From Ostrea edulis (taxonomy: Eukaryota), in the NCBI RefSeq assembly GCF_947568905.1, contig NC_079169.1:38130001-38194000 (forward strand): a stretch of DNA of 64,000 nucleotides. Direction: 5' to 3'. Each line of letters starts with the position of its first letter. Within the stretch, counting starts at the first letter, position 1. Made by a program: the position numbers and the translations under genes. The notes below the pieces were generated by a model. The model saw nothing but the letters and a program-made list of their open reading frames with translations, was not told the origin of the DNA and searched no databases. Below, piece after piece: positions 3,001 through 64,000 of this stretch.

Positions 3001-6000
3001 TCTATCACTACCTGGAATGGAGAGGAGGATCTTATGTTGACCACTTGTCTGGCATAGTAGGAGCCAATATTTCCATGCACGGAGAGAACATTAAATAATG
3101 GCCCATTTATCTGATTTCTGTAGTAGACAGTAAGTGTGTCTACATCTCTACCATACAAGTAGTAGAAGAATCGGAATTGGCAGTAGGGTTGAGCACTAGA
3201 TGCTTGGAAGGTGCGACTGGCAATCCTTGCTTTCTGTCCTGGTTTGACCGGTCTTGAGGTCTCTAAGTAGAGATAATGTCCAGTATTAGAGTTCAGAGTA
3301 TGATCTTTGGTCGGTCCGGTCAAGGCTGATGGTGTTGGACCACTGCGGAGAGTCCAGTCTCTATCATCATCTGTAAGCTGAGTCCAGTCACAAAGGCCAT
3401 GTTCAAAGTTACATCTGTTGTAGGCAGAGCAGGTGTTGTTGGCCTCATCTGTATTGTCCCCACAGTCATCAGAATAATCACACACCCGATTCTGGGAGAC
3501 ACAGGCTCCACTTGTACATTTAAATGTCACAAATGAGTTGCATGAAGAAGAGGTTGGGAATGCACAGCCTTGGAAGCTGATGTCATCTACTGCAATGTCA
3601 CCCACACCACTGTAAGTTCGCTGTCCAGTAATGATCACCTGGAATTGGGAGTGCATTCTTCCAATAGGAACAATGGCCTGCTTCCACACATTGCCCTGGT
3701 CTCCAGACAGATAGAAAATTTGAGTTCTAGTGAAACCAGTTAACTCTTTCAGATACACTCGGAGGATTTGGCTGCCTTTCATATGATACCAGAAAGTCAG
3801 CTGACAGGTGGTTGATGATTGGCCAATCACTGGACTTGTTAAATCTGCTAGTCTTGTATATACTCCTGCCTTGGGGGCCACATACTTGTAATACCCATTA
3901 GGTCCCAGTGTTGTATGGTCAGTCCTAGGTTGGTTGGTATTCTGAGTGGAGGATGATCCTTTGGATGTAATCCACTGGAATCCTGATGAGGTGCTGTTCC
4001 ATTTACAGGATGGATGACTCGGCTCAAAATCACAGTTAAAGCCACAATTCGATTCATCCTCACCATTTGGACAATCACTGTTGAAGTCACAGACACTGTT
4101 GATACTTGTCAAACACTGTCCATTGCCACATCTGAAGGGACAAGTTGGGTTAATTGTTGGATTGATACAGTGTCCAGCTGTGATGGAAATATCATCAATA
4201 GCAATGTCTCCTAGAACACCACCCACTACACCCTCTATCAGTATCTGGTAATCTCTACCATTAGTTGATGTAAACTCTACATTGCCTTGTTTCCATCCCC
4301 GACCTTGGTTTCCTGTGAGAGTAAACACTGAGTTTGGAGTGGATGTAAAAAAATACTGATAGATGTTGAGGGTTCCCATTTGTACTCCATACATATTGTA
4401 CCAGAAAGTCATACAGCGAACTGGGGTCTTTGAACTCTCAAATGTTTGGGAGGCAAGCCATGCCTTATCACCACGTTTTCTTGGAGCAGAAGCTTCGATA
4501 TAGATGTAGGTACCATAAATAGTCTTCAGTGTATGATCTGTGGACGGTCCAGTGCCTGTACTTGCAGTAGTTCCCCTAGCTCTCTCCCAGTCAAAAGTAT
4601 CATTTTGCTGGACATTGGTCCAAGTACACACATCACTCTCAAAGTCACAGCTTCCAGGAGGTGGGCAGGCACCACTGGCCAGCTTGATATCATCGATTGC
4701 AATATCCCCAGCATATCCATTGCCAATAACTCCTTCAAAAGTCAGCCTGAATGCCGCTGGGCTGTTAATAGACTTCTGTGCAATCCTCCATTTGTTGCCC
4801 TGATTTCCTGACATCGTCCAAATAGGATTTTGAAGCTGACTGGAGGTTCCTTGTTTCAGATACATATTCAGTGCACCAATGTTTCTTCCGTACATATTGT
4901 ACCAAAATGTTAGACAAGATCCAGTACCTGAGGTGGCAGGGAAGGATGGACTGTCAATTCTTGCTTTGTCATTCCTTCTCCTTGGAGCAGACGATTCAAT
5001 GTACACATAATGCCCACTTGCCGTTCCATAGGTATGATCGCTTACTGGTCCAGTGCCTCTGCTAGCTGTACTTGATGAATGTAGTGCCCAGTCAAATTGA
5101 TCAGACACATCTTGGGTATATCCACACATTCCATACTCAAAGTCACAAGTCAAGGACCCTGGACATAAACCCTGGTTTAGTGAAATGTCATCCAGAGCAA
5201 TATCTCCTTGGTAACTGACACCTGCTACACCCTCAAACACAAACTTCACTTGTCCTTGACTTTGGAGATGGACCTGGGCATATTTCCAGAATAATCCTTG
5301 GTTTCCATGCTTGTTCCACAGGAGCTGTCTCCTTGTGGAGGACACATTTTGGACATATAGGTTGAGATTGTTGATGTGAGCTCCATGCATGTTGTACCAG
5401 AATTTCAGGCACACACCAGCAGACTTGACATACACAGAGGGACTAATTATTCTAGCTGTTGTATTTGGGAGCTTTCCTGACACTTCAATGTAGATGTAAT
5501 GGCCTAGATTATTTTTCAATGTGTGGTCAGATACTGGTCCAGTGCCACCTGAACTGGTTGATCCATTTTTCATTGTCCAATTGAAATCATCTCCTACATC
5601 TTGGTTCCAAGAGCAGAGACCTGACTCAAAGTCACAGTCCACCGCTGTTCTGGGGAAGACTGCAGGGGTTGTTCCCATAGAGATAGCAGATGTTGGTGTT
5701 GTGGCAGAGCAAGGGTTTGCAGAAATAAGGATATCATCAATGGCAATGTCACCTGTATAGTTTCCACCATAAACTCCTTCAAATATTATACTGTATTCAT
5801 GATTAGACACAAAGTTTACTGCGGCCTGATGCCATGTATTTCCTTGGTTGCCGCTAAGACTGAAGGCCATGGTTTTCTGTTTGTTGAAGAAGTCCTGTTT
5901 GTAGATATTCAGTGATCCAATGCCAGCTCCATACATGTGATACCAGAAATAGAGACAGCTGCCCACAGTTCTTGTAAGAATGTCACTGACCAGCCAGGCT

Positions 6001-9000
6001 TTTTCTCCAACTTTCCTATTATTTCCAGAAGATTCAATGTACATGTAGTAGCCTGCTTTGGTTCCTAGGGTATGGTCTTCACTCGGTCCGGTTGTGGTAG
6101 ATGGTGTTCCTCCATAATCTCTAAGCCAGTCAAAATCATCTCCGGTCAATGCATTAGTCCATCCACAAGTGTCCTGTTCAAAAGTACAGGAGCCATCTGG
6201 TGGGCACCGGCCATCTGTGACCAGAAGATCATCAATGGCAATGTCACCCCTGTATCCTATCCCTCGAACTCCTTTGATGAGAATCTGGTACTGCTTGCCT
6301 GGGCTAGTCTTCAGTGATACTGTAGCTCTCCTCCATATATTCTCCTGGTCTCCATTTCTTGTCCAAACTTGATCTGGGATCTGAGAACCATTGTTACCTT
6401 GATACACATTCAAAGAACCAATGCTGGTTCCATACATGTGATACCAGAACCGTAAACATCTGGCAGCTCCACCATCGTAGAACCTACTGACCAAAATGGC
6501 CTGATCATTGGGTTGTCTTGGAGCTGAACTCTCAATATAGGCAAAGTGACCAGTGTTGGATCCAAATGTATGGTCAAATGGAGGACCTGTTCCTACAGAT
6601 GCTGTGCCATTCTGGCCAATTGTCCAGTCAAAATCATCCATTTGCGAGTTTGTCCAATCACAGAAGGTACCATCTTCAAAGTCACATCCAGGCTGTGGTG
6701 GGCACACACCATTGGTTATATTGAAATCATCAATAGCAATGTCACCTCGGTATCCATTACCAACAACGCCATTGACTGAAAGTCGGAAGTCAGTATTGGA
6801 TATGACCTGTCTCTGTGCCATTTTCCAAGCATCACCCTGGGTTCCATTTCTAGACCAAAACAGAGTTCTGTTGTTGTTTGTCACAAGGTAAATATTGAGA
6901 CTGCCAATGTTGTTTCCAAACATATAGTACCAAAATGTCAGACAATGGCCTTGGGGAGGTGTGGGGGGCAGATTGGCACTATCAAGGATAGCTACATCTC
7001 CTTTATGCCTCGGTGCTGAAGTCTCGATAAATGCATAGAATCCTTGTCCTGTTCCTGTAGTGTGGTCAAATTTTGGACCTGTTCCTACACTCTTGGTGGA
7101 TCCATTCAGTCTGGACCAGTCAAAGTCATCATCTACAGCCTGGTTCCAATTGCAGAAATTTTGAGAGAAATCACAAGCAAGGTTTGGAGGTGGAGCAAGT
7201 GGATAACAGTTGGCAAAGGTGATGTCATCAATAGCTATATCAGAAGTGGTGGAGGCAGAGAAGCCCCTCGATGGAAGGACTTCAAAGACGATACTGAACT
7301 GGCCAGTAGTCTTTCCAAGGGACTTGCCTATGTATGCAGTTCCCTTCTGCCATGCAGATCCATGGTTTCCACTTAATAGCAATAGAGTTTTCTTGGTACT
7401 GTTGACTAAGGCATTAACAATTAAGCTTCCTGTGTTTTGTCCATTAATGTTGTAGTAGAAGTACATTTCACAAGTGTCTGATGCAGGTGGCAGAGGTGGA
7501 CTCTGAAGTACAGCTCGACTCAAGAATACTCTGTAAGTTCCTTCCACATAAGCATAATATCCACCAGAAGTGTTGGTGCTATGGTCAGTTTGAGGTCCAA
7601 CAGCATTTCCAGTGTTCTGTGATCCAGAGTGTCTGGTCCAATTGTAACGTCCAGTGCTGAGGTCATTCCATCCACACAATCCATTTTCAAAGTTACAGGG
7701 TCCACATGTTGCTTCATCTGATCCATCTGTGCAGTCAGCAATCCAATTGCAGACTTTCTGGGTTGGTATGCAGGTAGTCTGGTCAGCACACTGAAAATTT
7801 CCACTTCCACATGGGCTGACAGTTGAAACAGTCGGAGGAATAGTTATAGAGGTGGCAAAGGTCTGGTTTGTTTTCTTGCAGCCTTTACTGAAGACTGTGT
7901 CATCAACAGCAATGTCACTGTAGTAACCGCTTCCTACCACTCCCTCCATCAAGACCTGGAATGGATATGGACTGATGAGATTGACAGTGGTCTTCACCCA
8001 CACATCTCCCCTATTTCCAGACACGGTGTACACTTTACTTAGATGTTTGTTGATGTCAAGTGTGTATACATTCAGAGTCCCCATGGTTCGACCATTCATA
8101 TTGTAATAGAATGTAATCATACACTGGTCTTGGGTTTGTGCTGTGCTGTACATGCTACTGAGGAGAACAGCATTATCTCCAAGTCTTCTGGGCCTGGAGG
8201 ACTCTATGTAGATGTACCCGCCAGATCGGAGCCCAGTGGTGTGGTCCCTAGAAGGTCCTGTGGATACTGATGGAGTGGGAGCATTTCGTCTGGTCCAGTC
8301 AAACTTATCTCCCCTGTCCTGCACCCAGTCACACAGAGAGGTAGAGAAGTCACAGCGAGATGGGAACTGGTCACAGTGAGCATTTGGTCCAATTTCATCT
8401 GTGTTATCTCCACAGTCATCAGTGTAGTCACAGACTCGAGACATGTCTACACAGGATCCACGCTGGCAAGTGAACTGAGTGGAGGGACATGAGCTCTGTA
8501 TTGGAGGAAGTCCACAATTCACAAAAGAAACATCATCAATTGCAATGTCTCCAATCACTGTGTAGCTACGATAGGCACGGAACTCAATGCTGAAAGGAGC
8601 AGTCCTACGACCAATGTTGACAGTGTACAAATTCCATTGGTTGCCTTGATTTCTGTAAAAGCTTGACAGGCGTGTCGATGTTCCTCCTGTGACAATATAG
8701 ACATATAATCGACCAATGTGGTTACCATACATATGATAGTAAAATGACATCTGACAGGTATCGGCTGCCTGTTGGAGAGTGGGGCCTCTCAGAGTGGCAA
8801 GCGAGTTGGCTTTTCCATTGCTGGCATCAACATACATGTAATAATGGGTAGCATCTCCATAAGTGTGGTCACTGGAGGGACCGGTATTGGCAGTCTCTGT
8901 TCCATTGTTGTGTCTTTCCCAGCGGAAGGATCCAGCACTGTTGTCAAACCAGCCACAAAGTCCTGTGCTTCCGTCAAACGTACAATTTCCACAGTTCTTC

Positions 9001-9454
9001 TCATCGACTCCGTTACTGCAGTCTTTGTTGAAATCACACTGCTGGCTCTGGGTGTAAGTAGTTCCATCCCCACAACTGAAGAATTTTGGTCCAAATGACC
9101 CAGAACAGGTTCCAGTGGTTAGACTGATATCATCAATTGCAATGTCCCCTGCGAATCCTTGACCCTCTACTCCTGTGAAGGTTAAAATGTACTCGAATCG
9201 GCTGGTGATGTTAACACTGGCTTGGAGCCACTTCTGTCCCGTGTTGCCTGTATTGGACCACAGAGAGATGGCATTTCCATACTGAGTGGAGCGTACGGAC
9301 TCCATTCTAATGCTGAGAGAGCCCACTTGGGTTCCATACATCAGGTACCAGAAAGAGAGACAGCTGGCAGAGGTGGCATTCAGAGTGGTGGACTGTAAAA
9401 TGGCTTTGTCTCCTGGCTTACGTGGAGCTGAAGCTTCAATATAGGCATAGTATC
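1..9454 (-). CDS. Exon 54: giant uninterrupted exon (15 complete + 2 partial MAM, 10 LDLa), runs off window start
   Basis: Acceptor tttacag|GA TAC TAT at 9454. The same frame (codon starts at positions 2 mod 3) holds at 9452, 5150, 2651 and 83. The ORF track has no terminated ORF in this frame, consistent with no stop codon. Confidence 0.93.
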
Positions 9455-12400
9455 CTGTAAAGAAAGTTATTCATTGGGTAATTAGAACATTTCCAATGCT
9501 TTTGCCTTCAATATCTACACCAATTGTACTAACAGGTATTCCCTCATGAATGCAATGAAGACATGAACAGTGTGTATGAATCTTAATAAACATAGTACAT
9601 CTATTTCAATGGCTGAAGATTCCAACAGAAATGAAAGTAGAATGTAAAGATAAGATACGAATTTCATTTGAAAATACATGAGGGTATGAACTGCAGCAAA
9701 ACTTCACACAGGCTTACTTTTCATTAAGTGTTAACTCTCTTCATAAAGTATGCTGGCATGAAGTATCACAGTTCATATCTTCATGCATTTTTTAAACAAG
9801 AGGCCCATAGGCCATATCACTCACCTGAGTCACCTTGGCCAATATCTGCAGATTTTCCCCTACAGATTTGCATGTAAAACATTGATCATCTATCCTACCA
9901 CTGTGATGTTAACAAACTTGAATCTGGACTATATCAGGAAGCTTACATGTAAATTTGAACTTTTCTGGTCCAGTGGTTCTTGAGATGAAGATTTTTAAAG
10001 ATTTTCCCTATACATTTGCATGTATAACTGATCCCCTATTGTGGCCCCATCCTACCACCAGGGGCCATGGTTTTAACAAATTTGAATACTTTTTTGTGAT
10101 TATCTTCCCTTTGAAGGGGACACAGCCCTTCATTTGAACAAATTTGAAAGCCCTTCACCCAAGGATGCTATTTGCCAAACTTGGTTGAAAATGGTCCAGT
10201 GGTTCTGGAGAAGAAGTCAAAAATGTAAAAAGTTTACAGACAGACAGAAAACAGGTAATCAGAAAAGCTCAGGCAAGCTAAAAATAAAATTTATTTTGTA
10301 AAAGTAAATCATTTTAACTGTAAACAGTTAAGAACTGAGATCGTATTCCTACTTCTTTTTTTGACAAGATTTTAAATATATGCATGCCTCTGCTCAATAC
10401 AAATTAAGATATCTATGTGTGATTTGAGTGTGAAGTTTTACCATTAGCATTTCCAACAGTGTGGTCCACTGAGGGGCCAGTTCTAGCACTTCCTGTGGCC
10501 CCCTTGTTTCTCAGCCAATCAAAATCATCACCAGTCATTGTATTGGTCCAGGTACAAAAATCTGTTTCAAAGTTACAGCTACCAGGTGCTGGACAGGCTC
10601 CATCTACAATGCTGACATCATCGATTGCAATGTCACCAAGATACGATCTTCCACGGATTCCCTCAAATGTAATCTGTGTGCACAAATAATGAAATGTCAG
10701 GGTAAGAAAATCTAATTTACATACAGTAAAACATGGTTACAGCAAAGTAATTTTCATATCCGGTAGATTTAAAATACAGTAAAACATACTTATAAGGAAC
10801 ATGTTTATAATGACTTCATGCTTATTGTGAAATGATATTTATTCTCTATGAGAGGAAAATGATAAAGTTTGGTTATAATAAATCATGTCTATAATGAATC
10901 AAAACTCTTCATGCTATAAATGTGTTTTACTGTATATCTATAATAACTATTAAACAAAAGTATTAATTTGAAAAAATTACTAAAAATAAACAACAATGCA
11001 CTACTAGATCCAAATTCTCTATAGGACTGTATTTTTCTCCATGACAATGAAGACAGTTCTGTTCACTGACCTGATACAGTGTATCACTATAAATAATAAA
11101 GACAGTTCTGTTCGCTGTCCTGATACAATGCATCACTATAAATAATAAAGACAGTTCTGTTCACTGACCTGATACAGTGTATCACTATAAATAATAAAGA
11201 CAGTTCTGTTCACTGACCTGATACAATGCATCACTATAAATAATAAAGACAGTTCTGTTCACTGACCTGATACAATGCATCACTATAAATAATAAAGACA
11301 GTTCTGTTCGCTGTCCTGATACAATGCATCACTATAAATAATAAAGACAGTTCTGTTCGCTGTCCTGATACAATGCATCACTATAAATAATGAAGACAGT
11401 TCTGTTCGCTGACCTGATACAATGCATCACTATAAATAATAAAGACAGTTCTGTTCGCTGACCTGATACAATGCATCACTATAAATAATAAAGACAGTTC
11501 TGTTCGCTGTCCTGATACGGTGTATCACTGTAAACAATAAAGACAGTTCTGTTCGCTGACCTGATACAATGCATCACTATAAATAATAAAGACAGTTCTG
11601 TTCGCTGACCTGATACAATGCATCACTATAAATAATAAAGGCAGTTCTGTTCGCTGTCCTGATACGGTGTATCACTGTAAACAATAAAGACAGTTCTGTT
11701 CGCTGACCTGATACAGTGTATCACTATAAATAATAAAGACAGTTCTGTTCGCTGACCTGATATGGTGTATCACTGTTGAGCGTGATCTGTCCAATACGCC
11801 ACATGTTGTACTGGTTCCCTGACCTTGTCCAGATTGCAGGTCTGAGAGTACCCTGGGAGAAGAGACGAATATTGAGAGTTCCGACTGTGCCATACATATG
11901 GTAGAAGAATGTCATGCAGCGACCGGTGGTGGGCGGGAATGTGGGTGACAAGAGGCGGGCCTTCTGACCAGGACGTCTCGGGGCCGATGTCTCAATGTAC
12001 ATGTAATAGCCTGTCAATAGGTAGACAAACTCGAATAAATTCCTAAACATTATGCTATAATATTACAAACGATTTTTTAAATTGTAATGTAAGGTTCCTT
12101 AATTTAAATCCAACCTATCAATCGATGATTATTATAAACCTGTTTAATAAAGCACCAAATGTGTGGTGAAGACATATTACCATCTTTTGTTCCGTAGGTG
12201 TGATCCACACTGGGCCCTGTGCCACGCGTTGTCGTGCCACCATTGTCTTTGACCCAATCAAAGTCATCGGTTTTGTCCTGTGTATATCCACAAACATTCT
12301 GGTCTTCAAAGTCACAAGTGTCTGTAAGAAAATAATACCTCTCACATTCATGAATAAATTGAATATTACAAGGACATAGTTGTAGTAATAACTTTAACAG

Positions 12401-33400: not shown

Positions 33401-36400
33401 TTCAATCACATGTTAGGCGCTTCCTTGAGAAGTCATGGAACTGTCAGTACGCACTTTAAAACACGCAAGTTTCATTTATCTGTTATATATATAATTATTA
33501 TATATTATATCGGTTTAAGTGTTTAGTATTGATGTTAATTAGTGCTATGCATATACTGGATTTTCGTCGAAAATAAAAAATATATTTACAGGTATTTCCC
33601 TTTCTTCGGGAAATACAGGTAAAATGAAAGTCTATAGAAATGAAAATATTTCACCTGACATCCTAAATTTATGTGTGACATATACCAAACAGTCATATTT
33701 TTAAACAGACATATTTTTAAAGTAACGTTTATCTGGGTTTACGCCCCCCCCCTCCCATTTTTAAAGTAACGTTTATCTGGGTTTACGCCCCCCCCCCCTC
33801 CCCTATTTGAAATATTAGATAGATCCAATATGAATTGCATGTATATAAAACAGCCGTCCGATTGTTGTGCTACCTGTTGGTTTACTTTCTGCGGTGTTTA
33901 CAAGTTTTACAATATGTAATATTCCTTGATTGTGAACGTACATATGTATCTTACAATGCTGTAAATATGTACAAAATAGCATCGAATCCTAAAAATAGCC
34001 GATAAAGTTTACCATTGCGTAGCTATACAGCGATACGTTTAGTAATAATTATGTCGCTCACCTTTTGTTCGCACGTAAAAAAAAAAATTTAACAATTGTA
34101 TTTTGGCAACACTAACCTGAAATTATAAAATGTTTTGCAAATACTAATTTATTTCCGAAATTAGAAAAAATCAACTTGTAGATTCTGCGTTCTGACCTGT
34201 AGCTTTACTCTTTTACACACACACATCTCACGAAAAAAAAAATGCTTGACAAATAATTGAAAATATTTCTAAAAACCCGATGATCAATCAAATTATTGTA
34301 TTTCACTTATGACGGTTAATAAAATATTTTGTAAAATTTTTAGGATCTAGACAATATTAACAATGAATATTTTCCCATGAAAAATCTTACTAATCAGAAC
34401 GCAGGTGCGTGTTCTATTAACGAAAACAGTGATGACGGTGAATCAGACGATATGTCAACCAATTTAGAGGCCCAGGTACACATGTTTGGAGAAGGGATTG
34501 CCAACTTACCCCATGATCCTTGCACAGAAGATGTGAAATAACGATCTTTAATTGAAAAGGGATGCAGGTGTGCAAAAAACTGTATTTCTACATTTAGTTT
34601 TTCAGACATCAGAGAACACGCTATTTCCTTAACTGAGATGACAAAAAATGAAAGACTTTCATATTATGGCGAAGTTTATAAAGATAAAATCTAAATGTAG
34701 ACAGTCAAAAGATGGAGATTCAATTAGAAAACGTCTTCGATACATTAAGTTTGTCGACAAACTTTTTTGATAACACACAGCATTGGCGAGTTTGCATTGA
34801 AATCTCTGATACATCATCTGATCACAAATGGGTTGGTTTCAAGAACTCATGGAAATAAACATAGGCGGCCTAAGAATGCATACGGTTTTGATGTTTTGAG
34901 GGATGTTCCTTAGTTCATATCTAGTTATGCCGAAGAGCATGGTCTGCCTCAGCCGGCAGCAGTCAACAGGAATATCGGTGTACACATAATTCTACCATGC
35001 AGTGAAAGCAAACAGTCCCTGTACAGAATATACGAAGATGTTTGTATCGATAATGACAAGACAGCAGTAGGGCTACCGACGTTCAAAGGCATCTGTCAGA
35101 TTTGCTGTCCAAATATAAAATTCATGTCACCCAAGACTTAAGTATGTCCTATCTGTGAACAACACAAAGATCACATTCAATTGGCCATGACAAAAAAACG
35201 ACAAGTTAGCTGCTCTGGACAAATATAATCTAATTAAAATCAGATCCTAGGATACGCTCACAATCGCTTACACAGAGTATACGGCGCGGATCTAAGAAGT
35301 CTGATTTTAATTAGATTGGGTCAAATATAGTGCACATTTGAATGAAGTGAAAGTAGAACGACAGGTACCTTACAATAAATAAAATTCACAAACCACTAAA
35401 GTGTGAAAAAATATCTTATAAAATGTATTACAGCAAGTGTGTTTAAAATCCGTTGTTGTAAATACTGTGATATTTACCGATAATAAGAACTGCATGAGCA
35501 ACCAGTCCTGGTACAACCAGCTTCGCCGATGTCAACAGAGCTTAACCATGTCCATTTATATACCTTTGATTACTCGCATGCTGTATACATGAAAGGTGAA
35601 GATCTATACGGAACAGTGATCAATCTCATAACTCCTATAAGCAACACAAAATAGATAGTTTGGAAAACACGGACCCCTGTACCGCATCATGTTTGTCAAG
35701 TTGGACCTCTCTACTTTGCTACACCTAGAAAGATTCAGTTGTTTGGAGTTGCTATAGAACGTAGCTTCTTGATTATTTCTGTGTACTTCCGTTTCTAAAT
35801 TTAGACAATTTAATATTTTCTGGCGAACAAATAGTATTTAGAAATAGGTTTTGTAAATCACGTAGGTCAACTTCCTAGTAGATGAGGATTCGACACCGGG
35901 AAAAACGGAACACACGCCAAGGTCGCTATCAGCGTAATTTCTATGCTTCATTTTTGTTTTGAGAATTTTGGACTTGGTGAAAAAGAAAGCCACCTACAAT
36001 GTGATAACGCTTCAGGTTAAAATCCAAATTAAATAATTAAAGATAGTAATGAAGAAATAAGAACGATTGTGTAGTTGCACATGTATTATGGGTCTTTCAA
36101 TTTTTAAAGAAGCATTTTCATTTTACTTTGAATGAGAAAACAAATATAAATTCATGTTGACGTACTTACTTTGTAGAACGCTGAGTGACAAACACCCCCA
36201 AATAAATTTTCACATGCAAGTCCCATACCATGGCAAATTTCCCCCCAGTTTAGCTTGCATTTTCCCCAATAATGAAATTATGAAAGGAAAATGTATTTGA
36301 AAAAAATAAACGTTCGATGTGAATTATATATATACATAAGACTTACATGTAACAAAGTGTTATGGGAATGATAATTTGGATAGAATAGTTGAAAATTTTA

Positions 36401-39400
36401 GAAGGTTAAAGAAAATTAGATGTGTAAAATAAAGATAATATAATGTTTGATATGATTTTAAAACTTATTTACAATAAAATTGATTTTTCCCAGTTCGACT
36501 AAAATGTCAACTATTTTCCCCAATTTGAAAGCCACAGGACCCATGTAAAAATGTAGAAAAATCACTGCGGGTTTGTTTACTTAAAAAATTATACAGAAAG
36601 TCAGAGGTTGAATCTTGAATCAGTTAGCATCCGTAGTCAGAAAAAGCGGGACATCTATTAACGAAGTGGTTGTATTCGGTGGTGCTGATGGAGAATGGCT
36701 GGACTGGAAAACATTCACATCCAATTATTTCATTCCCTTCAAGGGTATTAGAAAATTCAGACACTTTGTTTTCAAAGCAGATAAGCCAGGTAGAATACGC
36801 TATTTAAAAGAACGTTGGGTGTTATTTTTTTTCACATAAGAAATGGATTGTAACAAGTCTGATTTATTATGTTACCACATATCGATTTTTTCGGCTGTTA
36901 CATGTAACAACAATCCTGAAAGGGGATACATTGTAGTTGGGTGATATGTGTGGATGTTGGGGGAGGGGGTTGCGGCGACTACGTTATAATTCGCTGACAT
37001 GCCATCTCAACAAAAAAATTCAAACCTTAATCTTTTTCAAACAAGGTACTGGTACATGTATATATAATTTCCTCTCTGAATTAAACTCTTATCAATGATT
37101 TACACTTCTCCTATATATTGTGCACATTCTTCTACCGGTATTGCTGTAGCTAAAGAAGTGCCAGACTCACCCGGAACAGAACTAAAACTGCTGAAAGCAG
37201 GCGTGGATACAGATGCCATCCTTCCTCCAAGCCATTCCGGCAACTGGTTTGACCAGAGAGAGAATGCAATACTTGTTTAAATTTATTAGACCTATTGTCA
37301 GGGCCCCGTACAAGGACGTAGTCGCCCCCTCTCCCGACACCCAGGAGAATAAAAGACAATAAAAACTAGCCTATTTTGAATCTGTCATAATCTAAATAAT
37401 TGTTTGAATGTTGATAAATGTATACCTATATATCAGATGATAAAAAAAATTCAGACTCATGTATTTTGATTACGTTTGAAATAGTAACAAAACGTAACAA
37501 AATACAACGTAAATTTCCAAAAATCATGACGTCAAACGACTCGATGCAAGTTTTTACCAAGTTTGATGGGGATTTTAAGGTCATTATCATTGGGCTGTAA
37601 CGTAATGTTACATATCAACAGAAAGAGGAGAAATTCTTCTATCTAAAACATTTAAAAGGTGAAAAAGTGATATTTTTCACTTAAGGGTGGTTTTTGCTTG
37701 ACGGTAATCATATGTGAAAATACTGTATACTTTTATTTCGTGAGACCTTATTTTCACATGGATACAATGATGTATTAATTCACAAGACAACACTTTCATG
37801 AATCAATATTTATTGCTTCCATACAAAGAGTTTAATATTCATAAGAACTAACTCTTTCATAAGTAATGTTCTTGTTAATAAAATGTGATTCATAGTAATT
37901 ATGCAGTGAAAAAATCAGTGGAAATGCCTAGTTATAGATTTATCTGAGATCTATATTCATATTCAAAAACACAAAACTCACCTGACATGTGTTTTGGGTG
38001 GGCGGTACCGCAGTGAACAACGGGCTGATAAGACGGGCCATATCTCCACGTCTGCGGGGTGATGAGGACTCAATGAACATGTAATAGCCCGAGGCTGTTC
38101 CCCGAGTGTGATCACGGGATGGACCTGTTCCGTATGTTGCAGTGTGACCATTAGCTCTCGTCCAGTCAAATTTATCAGTTTTATCTTGAGTCCAACTACA
38201 GATGCTTCTCTCAAAGTTGCACGAGGCAGGGTAATATTCTATTGATAAAGTATCAATAATCTAATTAAAATTACTAAATTAACAAACTGTGTCAAAATGC
38301 TGCATTGAACATATTCTATATCATATGAATATATGCTGGGAATGATAAAGAATTCTAACAACTCATTCGTTTTGAAGTTTTTGAACTTGAATTTGAAGCT
38401 TCATACAGCAAACGTCTTCTATAACGTACTCAGATATAAAATAAAGAGTCTCTTTATTTTTTAGGAATTCATATTTGTACTGAATACAATCAAACTAAAC
38501 CAAAAATTATATATCAACATATGTATCCATTTTTTTGTTTGTATCAACTGTCCTTAAAGCTTACTGCAAGAAGAAGGGGCCTCATCAGAGCCGTCTCCAC
38601 AGTCATCGCTGTAGTCGCAACGCTGTTTGTCTGGTACGCAGCCCTTGTTGACCGTACAGTGGAACTGGTAAGGGGAAGGACAGGTGGCCTGAGCAGCTGG
38701 ACAACACAGAAAACATGCCCACAATCAATCACTCGGATAATCTATCACAAAACTTCCCACACTTCATTAAAATCTTTATCTTTCAGTATTTATTCATTTT
38801 CTTGATTCATTAATTTTATGGAATTTGAAATAGAAAACCTGGATAGTTGCAGTTGATGAGTTGGAAGTCGTCAATAGCGATGTCTCCCTGCACACTGTAG
38901 GTCCGGGTCGCCCGGATCAGGAGCTAGTAATGTAACAAGAGTAAATCAGCATGATATAGGATAATGTTTCTCTGATTTCAAAAAAAAGCCATTACAATGC
39001 TTACATCAAATACAGTTCTCTCCTTTAAGAATGCACACATTCTAAAATTTAAATTCTGCCACTTTATCAGGAAAACTTTTAAGATTTTAGAATGGGACTC
39101 ATGGAAATTGTAATGTGTGCCTCAATTAATAAAAAATCCAAAATTTCCCAAATTTAAAACAAGTCTGTAGAGCACACATTCTATTGTGTTATGTGATTAG
39201 ATGACAAGTGGTGACTCTTCAATATATAGGGAAATTGTAAGAATACAAAACACAATCCAAACAATGAGACACTAATGCATGCAGTTTTCATCACAAAATT
39301 GAAAACTTAATTTCATCATACTGGCAAAATAAATCAGTCACGATCATCCATCAGTAGGAACATTCACATTTGGCCTACATTAGACCTGACATTAGAAGCT

Positions 39401-42400
39401 GGTGTTCCATTGGACAACATACCTGGAATGCTCCATCAACCCGTCCAATGTCAATGATTGCTTTCTGCCAGTTTTGGCCTTGGTTACCAGATCGTCTCCA
39501 GATTTCTGTGTCCCTGTTATTTTCTCTGATCAGAACACTCAGTACACCTATACCTGATATCAATATACAAGTTGTTGAACTAACGCAGCACATAAGAGAA
39601 CCACATATACAGGGGTCTAGAATTTTTTTAAATAGTCACTTTCCCACGGGCAAGTACTACCTAGAAATCCACTTGCCCAATATCAAAATTCACTTACCCA
39701 AAAATAAAAATATTTTTGTCATCGATGTTATCTTTTTCTTGTTTACTTTCAGTTTCATTCTTTTCTCCATTACCCCGTTTTGCCTCTTTCTCATTTCCAG
39801 TACTAGCACCTTTTTTAGCAGAGCCAAATTGGAACATACTCATTTATTTCACATTTTCATTAAACAAGAAATTGATATTGAAAATTAAACTCCAGAAGAA
39901 AAGACGACAACTTAGCATTTTTTGAAATAGTTGTTATCATTTTTCTTTCATAAAAAACCCCCAAGAGATCATAATTGTTTGTAAATAGTTTAGATAAACT
40001 AACAAGATGGGACAGTCTTGTAGTTGTACTGATAATCTAACGTGGTCAGTATCAAGTTTAATTGATCTGAATAAACATTCCAAATTTAATATGTCTTAAG
40101 GCGTGACCGTGTTTGAGGGCGAAGCAAAAAGTATTGGAATTAGTATCTAGATTCATAACTGGACAAAATTATCCGAAATATTTGCACCTAAGTGAGGACA
40201 GAGCTCAATCAAAGTATTATAACTTTAGATATTTTTGATCCGCCTATTCATCGAACGCGGGAAACTCTATGCAACTGATGTAAACAGTGCATTGTGACGT
40301 CATATTCAGCATTGGTGTTTAGCAAATACACAAACATAGGAGCCATGGTACAATCACGTTAATCGAGGAATGATTATATATGATTAAGAAAATAAGATTT
40401 ACATGCTTTCACAGATTTTATGTAACATCTCAGAACGAGGTGAACTTGGGTACACGAGATTCAAAATGGAGAAATACATGTCCACGCACTAGTATTTGAA
40501 TTGACGCCATTGGGACCAAAATTTTCAAGTTCCATAGGTATGGTTTAATTTTTCATTAGTTTTCTATATTAACCTTTTAAACATGTATATACGTGTTACC
40601 TATAGGGAGAGCTCCCGGTCCTTCAGGCCGTGAGAGGGCTTAGCCCTCTATTACTTTCCCGTGTGGGTAAGCTTATCACTCTAGGTCTGTTTCCCGAGAC
40701 AACATTACACTTGCCCCGGGCAATGGGAAAGTGTAATTCTAAACCCCTGCATATAGCCAGTTTTTTCCACGGGTATGTAATTTTTACCTATTTTGTCAAC
40801 TTCCAAACATTCACCAAAATAAAACCCACTAAANNNNNNNNNNNNNNNNNNNNNNNNNNNNNNNNNNNNNNNNNNNNNNNNNNNNNNNNNNNNNNNNNNN
40901 NNNNNNNNNNNNNNNNNNNNNNNNNNNNNNNNNNNNNNNNNNNNNNNNNNNNNNNNNNNNNNNNNNNNNNNNNNNNNNNNNNNNNNNNNNNNNNNNNNNN
41001 NNNNNNNNNNNNNNNNNNNNNNNNNNNNNNNNNTAAATTTAATTACATCAGTATAAATAACATTGTATAAATTAAAAAAAAATGAGTTCACCAAAATTTT
41101 ATGCACCAACATTAATGATATACCTTATAGATCCAAATCTGTCAAATTTGTGTCCCGTCAAAAAAAGCAGCTATACAGTACATGTAGTGCAAGCATCATA
41201 TAACCATCCATAACAGTTATGTTATAACCCTCCTTAACAACAGTTAACAACAGTTATAACCCTTCTTAACAGTGAACCATCTATAACCCTCCTTAACAGT
41301 GAACCATCTATAACCCTCCTTAACAGTGACAATCTATAACCCTCCTTAACAGTGACAATCTATAACCCTCCTTAACAGTGAACCATCCATAACCCTCCTT
41401 AACAGTGACAATTTATAACCCTCCTTAACAGTGAACCATCCATAACCCTCCTTAACAGTGACAATCTATAACCCTCCTTAACAGTGAACCATCCATAACC
41501 CTCCTTAACAGTGACAATCTATAACCCTCCTTAACAGTGAACCATCCATAACCCTCCTTAACAGTGAACCATCCATAACCCTCCTTAACAGTGACAATCT
41601 ATAACCCTCCTTAACAGTGACCCATCCATAACCCTCCTTAACAGTGACAATCTATAACCCTCCTTAATAGTGACAATCTATAACCCTCCTTAATAGTGAC
41701 AATCTATAACCCTCCTTAACAGTGACAATCTATAACCCTCCTTAACAGTGAACCATCCATAACCCTCCTTAACAGTGAACCATCCATAACCCTCCTTAAC
41801 AGTGAACCATCCATAACCCTCCTTAACAGTGACAATCTATAACCCTCCTTAACAGTGACAATCTATAACCCTCCTTAACAGTGAACCATCCATAACCCTC
41901 CTTAACAGTGAACCATCCATAACCCTCCTTAACAGTGACAATCTATAACCCTCCTTAACAGTGAACCATCCATAACCCTCCTTAACAGTGACAATCTATA
42001 ACCCTCCTTAACAGTGACCCATCTATAACCCTCCTTAACAGTGACAATCTACAACCCTCCTTAACAGTGAACCATCCATAACCCTCCTTAACAGTGAACC
42101 ATCCATAACCCTCCTTAACAGTGACAATCTATAACCCTCCTTAACAGTGACAATCTATAACCCTCCTTAACAGTGACAATCCATAACCCTCCTTAACAGT
42201 GAACCATCCATAACCCTCCTTAACAGTGAACCATCCATAACCCTCCTTAACAGTGACAATCCATAACCCTCCTTAACAGTGAACCATTCATAACCCTCCT
42301 TAACAGTGAACCATCCATAACCCTCCGTAACAGTGAACCATCCATAACCCTCCTTAACAGTGACAATCTATAACCCTCCTTAACAGTGAACAAGTGTTGG

Positions 42401-45400
42401 GGGACATTGACAACATCACATACCTGTACCGTACATGTTGTACCACATTTGGAACTGACACGTGGAACTGCAGGCCTGTAGAGTGGGCCCGGTCAGCTCA
42501 GCCTGACTAGTGATGGAACCGTAACTGGCATCAATGTACAGGTAGTGACCTAGTGGACAAAGTTCACAACAAGATATCACATAGGAACCGCATCTTCTTA
42601 CAACTATTAATAAGTGTTTCAAGAGAGAAAATAACGAGAGATATGACCAGAACTGGAGAGTGAATTACCTGCAGCGTTACCAATGGTGTGGTCATAACGC
42701 GGCCCAGTGTTGGCAGTGGCCGTCTTGTTGCCTCCTCGTAACCAAGCAAACGACCCAGTTCCTGTCGCTACCCAGGTACAGAAGTCCTGCTCAAAATCAC
42801 AGGCTCCTGTCAAACAACAAGAAATGTCAAATTGATATATAACACTCCTCAAAGAGCCTCTCTGCTTAACATGGGAATTACACAAATATGTATATAAATC
42901 TCAAACTTCATTTAGGTTCCATTACACATCATATGCTAAACACTTACCACAGTCAGCCTCATCAGCTGTGTTAGAACAGTCACTTACCACAGTCAGCCTC
43001 ATCAACTGTGTTAGAACAGTCACTAATACCACAGTCAGCCTCATCAGCTGTGTTAGAACAGTCACTAATACCACAGTCAGCCTCATCAGCTGTGTTAGAA
43101 CAGTCACTAATACCACAGTCAGCCTCATCAGATGTGTTAGAACAGTCACTAATACCACAGTCAGCCTCATCAGCTGTGTTAGAACAGTCACTAATACCAC
43201 AGTCAGCCTCATCAGCTGTGTTAGAACAGTCACTAATACCACAGTCAGCCTCATCAGCTGTGTTAGAACAGTCACTAATACCACAGTCAGCCTCATCAGC
43301 TGTGTTAGAACAGTCACTAATACCACAGTCAGCCTCATCAGCTGTGTTAGAACAGTCACTAATACCACAGTCAGCCTCATCAGCTGTGTTAGAACAGTCA
43401 GTCTCATCAGCTGTGTTAGAACAGTCACTTACCACAGTCAGCCTCATCAGCTGTGTTAGAACAGTCACTTACCACAGTCAGCCTCATCAGCTGTGTTAGA
43501 ACAGTCACTTACCACAGTCAGCCTCATCAGCTGTGTTAGAACAGTCACTTACCACAGTCAGCCTCATCAGCTGTGTTAGAACAGTTAGCCTCATCAGCTG
43601 TGTTAGAACAGTCACTTACCACAGTCAGCCTCATCAGCTGTGTTAGAACAGTCACTAATACCACAGTCAGCCTCATCAACTGTGTTAGAACAGTTAGTCT
43701 CATCAGCTGTGTTATAACAGTCACTTACCACAGTCAGCCTCATCAGCTGTGTTAGAACAGTCACTTACCACAGTCAGCCTCATCAGCTGCATTAGAACAG
43801 TCCCTGATGAAGTTACAAACTTTGGTTTGTGGAATCAGGGTTTTCAGAGGATCTTTACATTGGAAGGTGCCATTGGTCTTTGGCTCTGTTTGTGTATGAA
43901 AATATGATAAGGTATATAATTATATTATATCTGGTAAAACATCAATTTCATTATAAAAATCCTTACAGAAAAACAATTGGGAGGGTGTCATTGGTCTTTT
44001 ACTCCGTTTGCATATGAATACATGTTACTTAACAAAAGCATTTATTCGTGATTATGTCAAGCAGAGTATCAGATCCAACAGCAGTCAATTTTAAATACAC
44101 TAACACAAGTACACATACAGAAGTGATCTCAATAGAAATTACACCATTTTTGTATTCAAATAAAATAGTACGAACCTGCAGAACAATCAAAGTTGTCTAG
44201 AATGAAATCATCAACTGCAATGTCTCCCTGGGTACCGCCACCAACATCAGCCTCAACATAGATCTAAAAAGAAAAAAGTCAAAGCAACTGTTACAATCAT
44301 ACTTTTATAAAGGAGGAATAACTTATCGTCATAATAGCTGACTTCCTTTTTGAAACATGAATTTGTATATCCTGTTTAAACCTAATTGCTTAGCTGGGTG
44401 ACTCAGTAACTGCTGATCTATAGATAGGGGGTTTCAGTCTAGCAAACATAAGGTTTCAAAAAAATGTCTAAGACATCCATAAGACAACATGGAACTCACC
44501 AGATGGTCATACAAAGAACCAAATTGACCATATTATCATCAACAAGAGATGGAGAAGTAGTCTTCTCGATGTGGTTGCAAAACAAGGGGCTGATGTGGGA
44601 AGTGACCACTCTCTAGTACTGGCAAAAATCAAGTTAAAACTGAGGAAATCAAGGAAAAAAGATCAAAGACCACCTCCAATCAACATCCAAAAACTCAAAG
44701 ATACAAAAACCCTGAGATCTTTTCAATTAAAAATCCAAAACAAGTTTTCAACACTCATGGAACATCCTGATGAAATCGATATGGAAACTTTTAACAAAGT
44801 ATTAATAGAAAATCGTCAACAAATACTTGGCCCAAAGAGAAAGAAAAAAGAATGGATTTCAGATAAAACATGGAAAATAGTAGAAGAACGAAAAGAGAAG
44901 AAAAGTCAAATCTTATCCACAAAATCCAAGAGGCAAAAGGACCAACTCCAGGCAGAATATCGGGCTATTGACAGGGAAGTAAAGAGGAGTGCAAGAGCTG
45001 ACAGAAAGGCATACACTGAAAAGCTAGCTTATGAGGCAGAACAAGCAGCTTCTAAACAAGACATGCAGACCCTCTATCGAATTACAAAAACATTAGCAGG
45101 CAAATTTCAGTCATCAGAGCTACCAATTAAAGGAAGGAACATTTTGAAGAAGTATTTAATATGAAAGACCCAGAGAACGAGGCAATAATATTACCAGCCA
45201 CGGACACATTAAATATTGATACTGATCCACCAAGTATAGAAGAGGTAAAAAAGGCAATCACCAAACTTAAAAATGGAAAAGCTGCAGGCATTGATCAGAT
45301 ACATGCAGAGCTCCTCAAGGTCGAAGAACACTGGACACCCACAATTTTGACAAATATCCTACAGAAGATCTGGGAACCAGAAGAAACACCATCCTTCTGG

Positions 45401-51277: not shown

Positions 51278-51344
<67 letters not shown>

Positions 51345-63762: not shown

Positions 63763-64000
63763 CTGAAATAGAATGAGCTGAACGAATACAAGCTGTAATA
63801 TTGATTCAAATAAAAAGCGTTTGTGAAATACTATGCTCCCTCAAACCTGGCCTATTGATCATTGAACTGGATTTTTATCAGTTGCAAACTCATACCTTGA
63901 TATTTAGTTCTTCTTACATGAAGTTTATTGTGATATATTAGTTCAAAAGTCATGATGAAGGTTAAAGTTGCAAACAGACTAAAACTACACCCCACCCCCC

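What the first reader, a model, noticed from the sequence alone, without database searches (positions are those of the whole stretch)
4170..43885. The same 3xLDLa+9xMAM super-repeat occurs twice in one gene: once in about 30 exons, once with no introns
Seen: exons 25-54a encode LDLa-MAM-LDLa-MAM-LDLa-MAMx7. The giant exon (about 9100 to 4170) encodes the same order, with position-specific signatures. Examples: [32 protein letters not shown] vs [32 protein letters not shown]; [27 protein letters not shown] vs [27 protein letters not shown]; a Thr-rich linker after the 7th MAM in both. A third copy starts at about 4145 (3x LDLa-MAM) and then diverges. One copy spans about 35 kb, the other about 5 kb. 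Inference: either wholesale cDNA-mediated intron loss running in from the 3' end, or a retro-duplicated block fused into the parent gene. Either way it is an internal before-and-after comparison for intron loss.
Basis: partly seen in the sequence, partly recalled or inferred. Interest (0 to 1): 0.85.

Follow-up and report, generated by a model that had tools for sequence, protein, structure and literature searches.

The report
Ancient 10-kb intronless exon in mollusc MAM/LDLa gene
A giant oyster-type gene holds two copies of a 1,650-residue domain block, one split into 29 small exons and one inside a single exon of at least 9.45 kb, and that exon comes from an old loss of about 60 neighbouring introns shared by bivalves and gastropods, not from a recent retro-copy.

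Summary
On the minus strand, 29 small exons (43885..10442) plus a giant exon starting at acceptor 9454 join into a 4,681-codon frame with no stop. It encodes block A and block B, each LDLa-MAM-LDLa-MAM-LDLa-MAMx7, followed by an (LDLa-MAM)n array. A and B are colinear, with domain offsets of 1643-1652 aa and 48% identity. The in-register pairing of their nine MAMs is the single best of 362,880 permutations. The N gap lies inside an intron.

- The giant exon starts inside MAM A9, not at the block boundary.
- It has the same start and content in another bivalve-like contig, a second oyster-like contig and Haliotis. Gigantopelta keeps the start but in three pieces; Aplysia holds a 3,252-aa piece.
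- In these relatives, except the short oyster-like contig, intron-split exons resume after it, so the exon is internal.
- The same block and array are intron-rich in amphioxus, sea urchin, Priapulus and a rotifer, with shared intron positions and phases in the first two.
- A two-block architecture also occurs in a rotifer and a scorpion.

The best reading is an old A/B duplication followed by one concerted, cDNA-type loss of about 60 introns before bivalves and gastropods split. dN/dS is 0.07. The scan also noted this exon separately (s1-287573).

The parts
10442..43885 (-). Block A (LDLa-MAM-LDLa-MAM-LDLa-MAMx7, up to the first 46 residues of MAM A9) in 29 exons: 43885-43769, 42806-42669, 42549-42424, 39553-39423, 38923-38839, 38696-38565, 38238-37982, 33084-32920, 32644-32557, 30234-30082, 29010-28744, 28111-27978, 27581-27452, 27013-26879, 26687-26425, 26189-26099, 25981-25844, 21374-21109, 20006-19775, 19413-19291, 17998-17868, 17345-17210, 16267-16115, 14950-14792, 14628-14504, 12521-12431, 12321-12181, 12010-11757, 10673-10442
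   Evidence: Splice junctions were chosen by MAM-HMM score or by alignment to block B. The joined frame has 0 stops, and 4,593 nt of exon sit among 29,838 nt of intron. A few junctions are ambiguous, for example 27581 vs 27605 and 38565 vs 38581.
9455..10441 (-). Last intron before the giant exon (987 nt, phase 1, at MAM HMM position about 45 of A9)
   Evidence: Donor ATG|GTAAAA, acceptor TTTCTTTACAG|GAT. The joined MAM scores 196.5 against 164.1 for the next candidate. An intron sits at this position in L001, L002, L003 and L008.
3..9454 (-). Visible part of the giant exon (3,150 codons); it runs off the window start
   Evidence: Stop-free frame holding 17 MAM stretches and 10 LDLa. GC is 0.44 against about 0.35 in the intron-rich part. 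dN/dS is 0.07 against L008.
9114..9454 (-). C-terminal two thirds of MAM A9 (HMM 44-158), the end of block A, already inside the giant exon
4176..9092 (-). Block B: the same L-M-L-M-L-Mx7 order with no intron
   Evidence: Global identity to A is 48.3% with 73 gap columns. The in-register pairing is the unique best of 9! permutations.
3..4139 (-). Array C: (LDLa-MAM)x7 plus an eighth LDLa and the first 65 HMM positions of MAM C8
   Evidence: C1/C2/C3 fall in the same clades as positions 1/2/3 of A and B, and later units alternate between two types.
40834..41033 (.). Assembly gap inside intron 42424|39553
44176..63765 (-). Upstream MAM-only part of the same gene (U1 partial, U2-U11), no LDLa, with patchy loss of the canonical introns
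   Evidence: The junction 44176|43885 links it to block A.

Best explanation
The window holds part of one very large mollusc gene of the 'MAM and LDL-receptor class A domain-containing protein' type. The closest named hit is from the oyster Saccostrea, at 83%.

Shown:
- Its ancestral building plan is MAMxn, then two copies of a 1,650-residue block (LDLa-MAM three times, then six more MAM), then an (LDLa-MAM)n array.
- Each MAM was split by introns at fixed places: about position 45 in phase 1 and about position 136 in phase 0, sometimes also about 89.
- The tract from the middle of MAM A9, through block B, to about the eighth LDLa-MAM unit has none of these introns. It forms one internal exon of about 10.2-10.7 kb.
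- The canonical small-exon pattern persists on both sides of it.
- The exon has since been kept under strong purifying selection.

Inferred:
- The A/B duplication is old, at least as old as the mollusc-rotifer split and probably older.
- The introns were lost in the lineage leading to bivalves and gastropods, in one event or very few.
- The loss happened by recombination of the gene with a reverse-transcribed spliced copy of its own mRNA.
For: - **Gene model and colinearity of A and B:**. Positional pairing is the best of 362,880 permutations, and the best of 720 for the six LDLa-less MAMs. All reader motifs sit at a 1,649-aa offset.
- **Same giant open frame in relatives:** it has the same start (HMM 35-45 of the MAM before block B) and the same domain string in L001 (3,533 aa), Haliotis L002 (3,567 aa) and L008 (3,416 aa). 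Gigantopelta L003 shares the start and holds it in three pieces. Aplysia L009 holds a 3,252-aa piece that starts later, at the second LDLa of block B. About a dozen further anonymous ORFs of 3,400-3,540 aa show the same string.
- **Orthology:** B_i and C_i of three species cluster domain by domain.
- **Intron-split units resume downstream:**
- **Outgroups keep the introns:** amphioxus, sea urchin, Priapulus and the rotifer Adineta are split into small exons all through the same block and array. Their longest open pieces are 185, 258, 357 and 434 aa.
- **Shared intron positions and phases:** amphioxus has 21 of 45 mapped junctions at HMM 44-51 in phase 1 and 14 at 128-139 in phase 0. Sea urchin has 13 and 5 of 24. 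These match oyster A and U.
- **Two blocks elsewhere:** Brachionus and Centruroides carry two complete blocks. Brachionus blocks 1 and 2 are reciprocal best matches to A and B.
- **Block tree:** A sits away from mollusc B. A mollusc-only A+B clade is disfavoured, with AU p = 0.036.
- **Constraint:** dN/dS is 0.07 over 3,151 codons.
Against: - No transcript data were available. That the giant exon is spliced to 10442 rests on frame, HMM completion and conservation.
- The 3' end is not in the window. In L008 the frame ends inside C8 at a plausible AAG|GTCAGT donor, and Aplysia also breaks inside C8. L001, Haliotis and Gigantopelta instead end after the next LDLa. The 3' boundary is therefore not uniform, which allows later gains or more than one loss event.
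- Aplysia and Gigantopelta have extra breaks inside the tract.
- The reverse-transcriptase mechanism is inferred from the pattern alone.
- The AU test is only modestly significant, and the group was named after the tree was seen.
- The deep branches of the block tree are short, and rotifer block 2 is not sister to mollusc B.
- The MAM tree used is the quick tree. In it A4 and A5 stay unresolved, and A6, A8 and A9 sit in unresolved groups that include their B partners.
- The C-terminal part of A9 shows no specific partner.
Confidence: 0.7

Rival explanations
1. Stepwise loss: the tract lost its introns in many separate events, singly or a few at a time, each by a small cDNA conversion or a genomic deletion, and happens to be empty now.
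For: The upstream MAMs of the same gene show patchy individual losses. U5 has no intron, and U3, U4, U8 and U9 lack one or two canonical ones. The 3' boundary differs between molluscs.
Against: Every canonical site is empty over about 3,400 codons. Block A carries about one intron per 57 residues, and the units just outside the tract keep their introns. That includes all eight visible phase-0 sites of A1-A8. The 5' boundary is the same in four of the five mollusc loci compared, L001, L002, L003 and L008. No sampled mollusc shows an intermediate state.
Confidence: 0.2
2. Retro-duplication: block B is a processed cDNA copy of block A that was inserted in frame into the parent gene.
For: A and B are colinear copies and B has no introns.
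Against: The intronless tract starts 115 residues before B and runs on through about 8 more LDLa-MAM units, so it does not match the duplicated unit. The B-position block has introns in four other phyla. Two blocks are present in a rotifer and a scorpion. A does not nest with mollusc B. The A9 part inside the giant exon is not close to U11, as a shifted cDNA insertion would predict.
Confidence: 0.06
3. Intronless is ancestral: blocks B and C never had introns, and the small exons of A, U and the outgroups come from intron gain.
For: None found, beyond the fact that gain is hard to exclude formally.
Against: The same two intron positions and phases recur in nearly every MAM of oyster A and U, amphioxus and sea urchin. 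Dozens of parallel gains at identical sites would be needed.
Confidence: 0.02
4. Artefact: cDNA contamination, a processed pseudogene or a misassembly.
For: None.
Against: Five independent assemblies show the same exon in the same genomic context, with flanking introns. The 3,156-codon frame is intact and dN/dS is 0.07.
Confidence: 0.02

Closest known systems
MAM and LDL-receptor class A domain-containing proteins (MLRP1/2 of invertebrates; vertebrate MALRD1-type)
   Same: Only MAM and LDLa domains are found. The best named hits carry this name in hemichordates, amphioxus, molluscs, arthropods and cnidarians. The domain string MAMxn, then one or two L-M-L-M-L-Mx7 blocks, then (L-M)n recurs across phyla; the doubled block shows complete in a rotifer and a scorpion.
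   Different: In the molluscs sampled here, about 3,400-3,570 residues of the middle of the gene are encoded by one exon. Public gene models cut this gene into pieces, and the Haliotis and Gigantopelta models break inside the giant exon.
Reverse-transcriptase-mediated concerted loss of adjacent introns (recombination of a gene with a cDNA of its own mRNA; the abstract of PMC2395259 reports recombination-caused internal loss in Cryptococcus; PMC3296678, on Drosophila, came up in the same search)
   Same: A run of neighbouring introns is missing precisely and in frame, with no net change of length. The A-to-B offsets stay at 1643-1652 aa. Flanking introns are kept.
   Different: The scale is about 60 introns and about 10 kb. 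The position is internal in a gene that may exceed 12,000 codons, judging by the two adjoining Haliotis models. The age predates the bivalve-gastropod split. The classic 3' bias is not seen.
Large internal coding exons of animals (PMC3467050 counts 1,115 human internal exons over 1 kb)
   Same: A very long internal exon lies between exons of ordinary size.
   Different: This exon is ten times the 1-kb threshold used there. It has a traceable origin by intron loss from a repeat whose intron-bearing sister copy sits next to it.

Membership tests
MAM and LDL-receptor class A domain-containing protein (MLRP type) | Repeated MAM domains (PF00629) | tested here: met
   17 stretches in the giant frame, E = 0. 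A further 9 in block A and 11 upstream.
MAM and LDL-receptor class A domain-containing protein (MLRP type) | Interspersed LDL-receptor class A modules (PF00057) | tested here: met
   E = 8.5e-68. 10 in the giant frame and 3 in block A.
MAM and LDL-receptor class A domain-containing protein (MLRP type) | Full-length similarity and a shared domain string with named members | tested here: met
   31-53% identity over 56-100% of block B to named proteins from many phyla. The same L-M-L-M-L-Mx7 string is present.
Concerted cDNA-mediated intron loss | Introns were present ancestrally at the sites now empty | tested here: met
   The sister block A and the orthologous blocks in amphioxus, sea urchin, Priapulus and a rotifer are intron-rich. 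Positions and phases are shared with amphioxus and sea urchin.
Concerted cDNA-mediated intron loss | Precise removal of a contiguous run, with flanking introns kept | tested here: met
   No stop or length change over 3,156 codons. Domain offsets are constant. Intron 10442|9454 is kept, and downstream introns are kept in relatives.
Concerted cDNA-mediated intron loss | Bias towards the 3' end of the gene | tested here: not met
   Intron-split exons resume after the giant exon in L001, L002, L003 and L009. Internal loss is also documented for this mechanism (PMC2395259).
Concerted cDNA-mediated intron loss | A single event | tested here: inconclusive
   The 5' boundary is identical in four mollusc loci. 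The 3' boundary differs between oyster/Aplysia and L001/Haliotis/Gigantopelta.
Retro-duplicated (processed) segment | The intronless tract coincides with the duplicated unit | tested here: not met
   The tract is the rest of A9 plus B plus about 8 L-M units.
Retro-duplicated (processed) segment | The copy is younger than the lineage that carries it and is sister to its parent | tested here: not met
   Block tree and AU test. The two-block architecture also occurs outside molluscs.
Retro-duplicated (processed) segment | Poly(A) remnant and target-site duplication | not testable with these tools
   Any such marks would be erased at 48% protein identity, and none is visible.

The most novel reading that the evidence does not exclude
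A single recombination with a spliced cDNA removed about 60 consecutive introns from the middle of this gene in a stem mollusc. The resulting internal coding exon of about 10.5 kb has been kept for more than half a billion years. That would make it one of the largest concerted intron-loss events traced in an animal gene. Its boundaries and the later re-interruptions in Gigantopelta, Aplysia and oysters could serve as a rare genomic change for dating and ordering mollusc and other lophotrochozoan lineages. It would also be a natural test of how a 10-kb internal exon is defined among 85-270-nt exons.
Probability: 0.45. Interest if true: 0.6.

Novelty: new member of a known kind. Interest (0 to 1): 0.5.

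Why it matters
Mass intron loss is usually inferred from genome-wide counts. Here one gene shows it locus by locus. The ancestral intron map can be read from the sister block next door and from orthologues in four other phyla. The limits of the lost tract are sharp, and the derived state is shared by bivalves and gastropods.

This gives a dated, bounded case for testing models of cDNA-mediated loss, including internal against 3'-anchored loss. It also allows a test of how a roughly 10-kb internal exon is recognised by the splicing machinery.

In practice, public annotations of this gene in Haliotis and Gigantopelta break inside the giant exon, and the Saccostrea model spans 232 kb across unrelated genes. 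The architecture described here would help correct them.

Tried and rejected
- **The ORF listing on 1-12000:** it gave nothing because the giant frame runs off the window. I found the frame with my own six-frame scan.
- **Is the A9 part inside the giant exon derived from the last upstream MAM (U11)?** A shifted cDNA insertion would predict this. U11 is not close (score 219, against 303 for B8), but B9 is not the best partner either, so the test is inconclusive.
- **Careful MAM-domain tree:** it did not finish in the time limit, so I used the quick tree. It resolves positions 1, 3 and 7 for block A. A2 groups with C2 inside the position-2-type clade. A4 and A5 are unresolved, and A6, A8 and A9 sit in unresolved groups with their B partners. 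The permutation test on alignment scores is the stronger evidence for pairing.
- **Literature:** two searches for this gene family combined with intron loss or exon structure found nothing relevant.
- **Earlier scan notes:** a word search found nothing.
- **Not attempted:** I found no annelid, brachiopod, cephalopod or chiton locus carrying block B among the listed hits, so the origin of the exon cannot be placed more finely than 'before the bivalve-gastropod split, after the split from rotifers'.
Full report
**1. What is in the window**

The minus strand carries a stop-free frame from 9470 to 3. It is 3,156 codons long and runs off the window. Pfam finds only MAM (17 stretches) and LDLa in it. 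GC is 0.44 over 1-10,000 and about 0.35 in most of the rest.

I built HMMs from the frame's own MAM and LDLa copies. They detect fragments of many more MAMs on the minus strand up to 63.8 kb. Three further LDLa lie at 43874-43770, 38673-38578 and 30187-30083.

**2. Gene model**

For each pair of neighbouring fragments I listed all GT(GC)/AG pairs that keep the frame open. I then chose by MAM-HMM score, or by alignment to block B for junctions between domains. Two exons that the HMM missed turned up by local alignment: the A3 tail at 27581-27452 and the A7 piece at 14628-14504.

The result is 29 exons of 85-267 nt from 43885 to 10442, plus the giant exon from acceptor 9454. Joined, they read 4,681 codons with no stop, while the other two frames have 167 and 366 stops. 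Exons sum to 4,593 nt and introns to 29,838 nt.

A few junctions are ambiguous within a few codons, for example 27581 against 27605. None of these affects the conclusions.

**3. The gap**

The N run 40834-41033 lies inside the 2,870-nt intron between exons 42549-42424 and 39553-39423. These exons cover MAM HMM positions 45-89 and 89-136. They join in phase 1 at CAG|GTATGT and ...ATCAG|GTA. The joined A1 is a complete MAM covering HMM 1-158, with a score of 154.8. Nothing coding needs to be read across the gap. I did not try to fill it.

**4. The repeat**

The model reads L-M-L-M-L-Mx7 (block A, residues 1-1649), the same again (block B, 1650-3297), and then L-M repeated (array C).

- Each B domain starts 1643-1652 residues after its A partner.
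- A and B are 48.3% identical over 1,612 aligned residues with 73 gap columns.
- A 26-residue Thr/Ser/Pro-rich linker follows the sixth MAM in both blocks, not the seventh.

To test positional pairing I scored each A_i against B_j, averaged over three species. The in-register assignment is the single best of all 362,880 permutations. It is also the best of 5,040 for the run of seven MAMs and of 720 for the six LDLa-less MAMs.

In a domain tree (the quick tree; the careful one did not finish):
- A3 is sister to the B3 clade, and A7 falls with B7.
- A1 falls with B1/C1.
- A2 groups with C2 inside the clade of position-2-type units.
- A6, A8 and A9 sit in unresolved groups that include their B partners. 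A4 and A5 are unresolved.

C1, C2 and C3 fall with positions 1, 2 and 3. Later C units alternate between two types, so the 'third copy' is the start of an L-M array with a two-unit period.

**5. Where the intronless tract begins and ends**

The giant exon does not begin at the A/B boundary. It begins at HMM position 44 of MAM A9, at a phase-1 intron (10442|9454), 115 residues before block B.

The window does not show its end. In L008, a genomic contig 84% identical in protein, the frame runs 260 residues further. It ends inside C8 at a plausible AAG|GTCAGT donor.

**6. Relatives**

A search with block B found named 'MAM and LDL-receptor class A domain-containing' proteins from many phyla. It also found about a dozen anonymous ORFs of 3,400-3,540 aa with the domain string of the giant exon. 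The closest named hit is from Saccostrea echinata at 83%, so the window probably comes from an oyster.

I read the genomic loci with the same HMMs.

| Locus | Source | Giant open frame |
|---|---|---|
| L001 | ENA contig of 3.6 Mb; groups with the oyster in the block tree | 3,533 aa |
| L002 | Haliotis rufescens | 3,567 aa |
| L003 | Gigantopelta aegis | same string in three pieces |
| L008 | oyster-like Logan contig | 3,416 aa |
| L009 | Aplysia californica | 3,252-aa piece |

- In L001, L002, L003 and L008 the exon before it is 'MAM tail + next MAM head', and the frame starts at HMM 35-45, as in the window.
- B_i and C_i of oyster, L001 and Haliotis cluster domain by domain with high support. 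The exon is therefore orthologous, not convergent.
- After the giant exon, MAM and LDLa again come in small pieces cut at the usual positions.
- L001 and Haliotis end the giant exon at TGT G|GTAAGT right after an LDLa. This is the same junction type as the LDLa exons of block A.

The exon is therefore internal.

**7. Outgroups**

The same block and the following L-M array are cut into small exons in four other phyla.

| Locus | Species | Longest open piece |
|---|---|---|
| L004 | amphioxus | 185 aa |
| L005 | sea urchin | 258 aa |
| L006 | Priapulus | 357 aa |
| L007 | the rotifer Adineta | 434 aa |

Mapping junctions onto the MAM HMM gave these counts:
- Amphioxus: 21 of 45 junctions at positions 44-51 in phase 1, and 14 at 128-139 in phase 0.
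- Sea urchin: 13 and 5 of 24 at the corresponding positions.

These are the positions and phases seen in oyster A and U. The introns are therefore ancestral, and the mollusc exon is the derived state.

At the density of block A, one intron per 57 residues, about 60 introns are missing.

**8. Age of the A/B duplication**

Two complete blocks also occur in Brachionus and Centruroides. The Penaeus and spider proteins show a second, partly detected block before the complete one. Brachionus blocks 1 and 2 are reciprocal best matches to A and B.

In a tree of whole blocks, oyster A groups with Brachionus block 1 and the hemichordate blocks. The mollusc B blocks form their own clade with bivalve and gastropod halves. 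Holding A together with the mollusc B blocks costs 25 log-likelihood units, with AU p = 0.036. This is modest support, and I named the group after seeing the tree.

Taken with the shared two-block architecture, the duplication predates molluscs.

**9. Mechanism**

Shown:
- the colinear duplicate;
- ancestral introns at fixed sites;
- a contiguous precise absence of all of them over about 3,400 codons;
- retained introns on both sides;
- conservation across bivalves and gastropods;
- strong constraint, with dN/dS 0.07 over 3,151 codons at dS 1.34.

Inferred: the loss came from recombination with a reverse-transcribed spliced mRNA. This is the accepted way to lose adjacent introns precisely, and internal cases are reported (PMC2395259). 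Also inferred: there was one event or very few.

The varying 3' boundary and the extra breaks in Gigantopelta and Aplysia leave room for later gains or a second event.

**10. Verdict**

A cDNA-type mass loss fits, but it is ancient and internal. Block B is not a retro-copy. The A-against-B comparison is a poor 'before and after', because the copies separated long before the loss.

Two literature searches found no description of this exon. That is weak evidence of novelty, so I rate it a new member of a known kind and of moderate interest.

Noticed in passing
window 42945-43802, 27326-27474, 21017-21134, 11046-11762 (also 12719-14463): Four intron minisatellites (units of 40-42, 36, 40 and 49 nt) start a few to 33 nt inside the preceding exon, so their first units overlap the exon end and its 5' splice site. 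The donors are at 43769, 27452, 21109 and 11757. The 40-42-nt unit does carry a donor copy: its reverse complement reads G|GTAAGTGACTG. The array just after donor 43769 also yields repeated LDLa C-terminal fragments in translation. A fifth array of 52 x 33 nt starts 41 nt after donor 14504. Five of 29 introns having such arrays at the donor looks like more than chance.
   Followed up: partly
window 44176-63765: The upstream MAM-only region shows patchy loss of the canonical introns. U5 is a single exon, U4 and U9 lack the position-45 intron, U3 lacks the position-136 intron, and U8 has only the position-89 intron. U6-U11 align in register with positions 4-9 of blocks A and B (rank 5 of 720 permutations). 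U4, U7 and U10 all resemble position 8, which hints at a three-MAM period.
   Followed up: partly
L003 10996-11814 and 16417-16508 (Gigantopelta aegis): The orthologous giant exon is interrupted by about 800 nt. A GT donor site (CTG|GTAGGT) lies at its start and an AG acceptor site (TTGCAG|GT) at its end, and a roughly 35-nt motif is repeated around the donor. This could be a lineage-specific intron gain or a spliced insertion. A second break is a frame overlap that may be a sequencing error.
   Followed up: no
L002 9861/10001 (Haliotis), L003 9968/10001 and 16511/16666 (Gigantopelta), Saccostrea model: Public gene models cut this gene inside the giant exon. In Haliotis, models of 8,781 and 3,845 aa meet there. 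The Saccostrea model stretches over 232 kb across unrelated kinase and BAR/SH3 genes. The true product may exceed 12,000 residues.
   Followed up: no
L008 about 10940 and L009 34785-35298, versus L001 20540 and L002 18090: The 3' end of the giant exon differs. It lies inside MAM C8 in the oyster-like contig and in Aplysia. It lies after the following LDLa in L001, Haliotis and Gigantopelta. Aplysia also has breaks in B1 with no assembly gap there.
   Followed up: partly
window 3-9092 and relatives: LDLa-MAM units fall into two alternating types. Units 1, 3, 5 and 7 form one clade and units 2, 4, 6 and 8 another, so the L-M arrays grew by duplication of a two-unit module.
   Followed up: no
window 30488-32356 and 41255-42391: Two long intronic minisatellites have 27-nt units, with about 70 and 43 copies. 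The first accounts for the GC and GC-skew jump at 30-32 kb.
   Followed up: no
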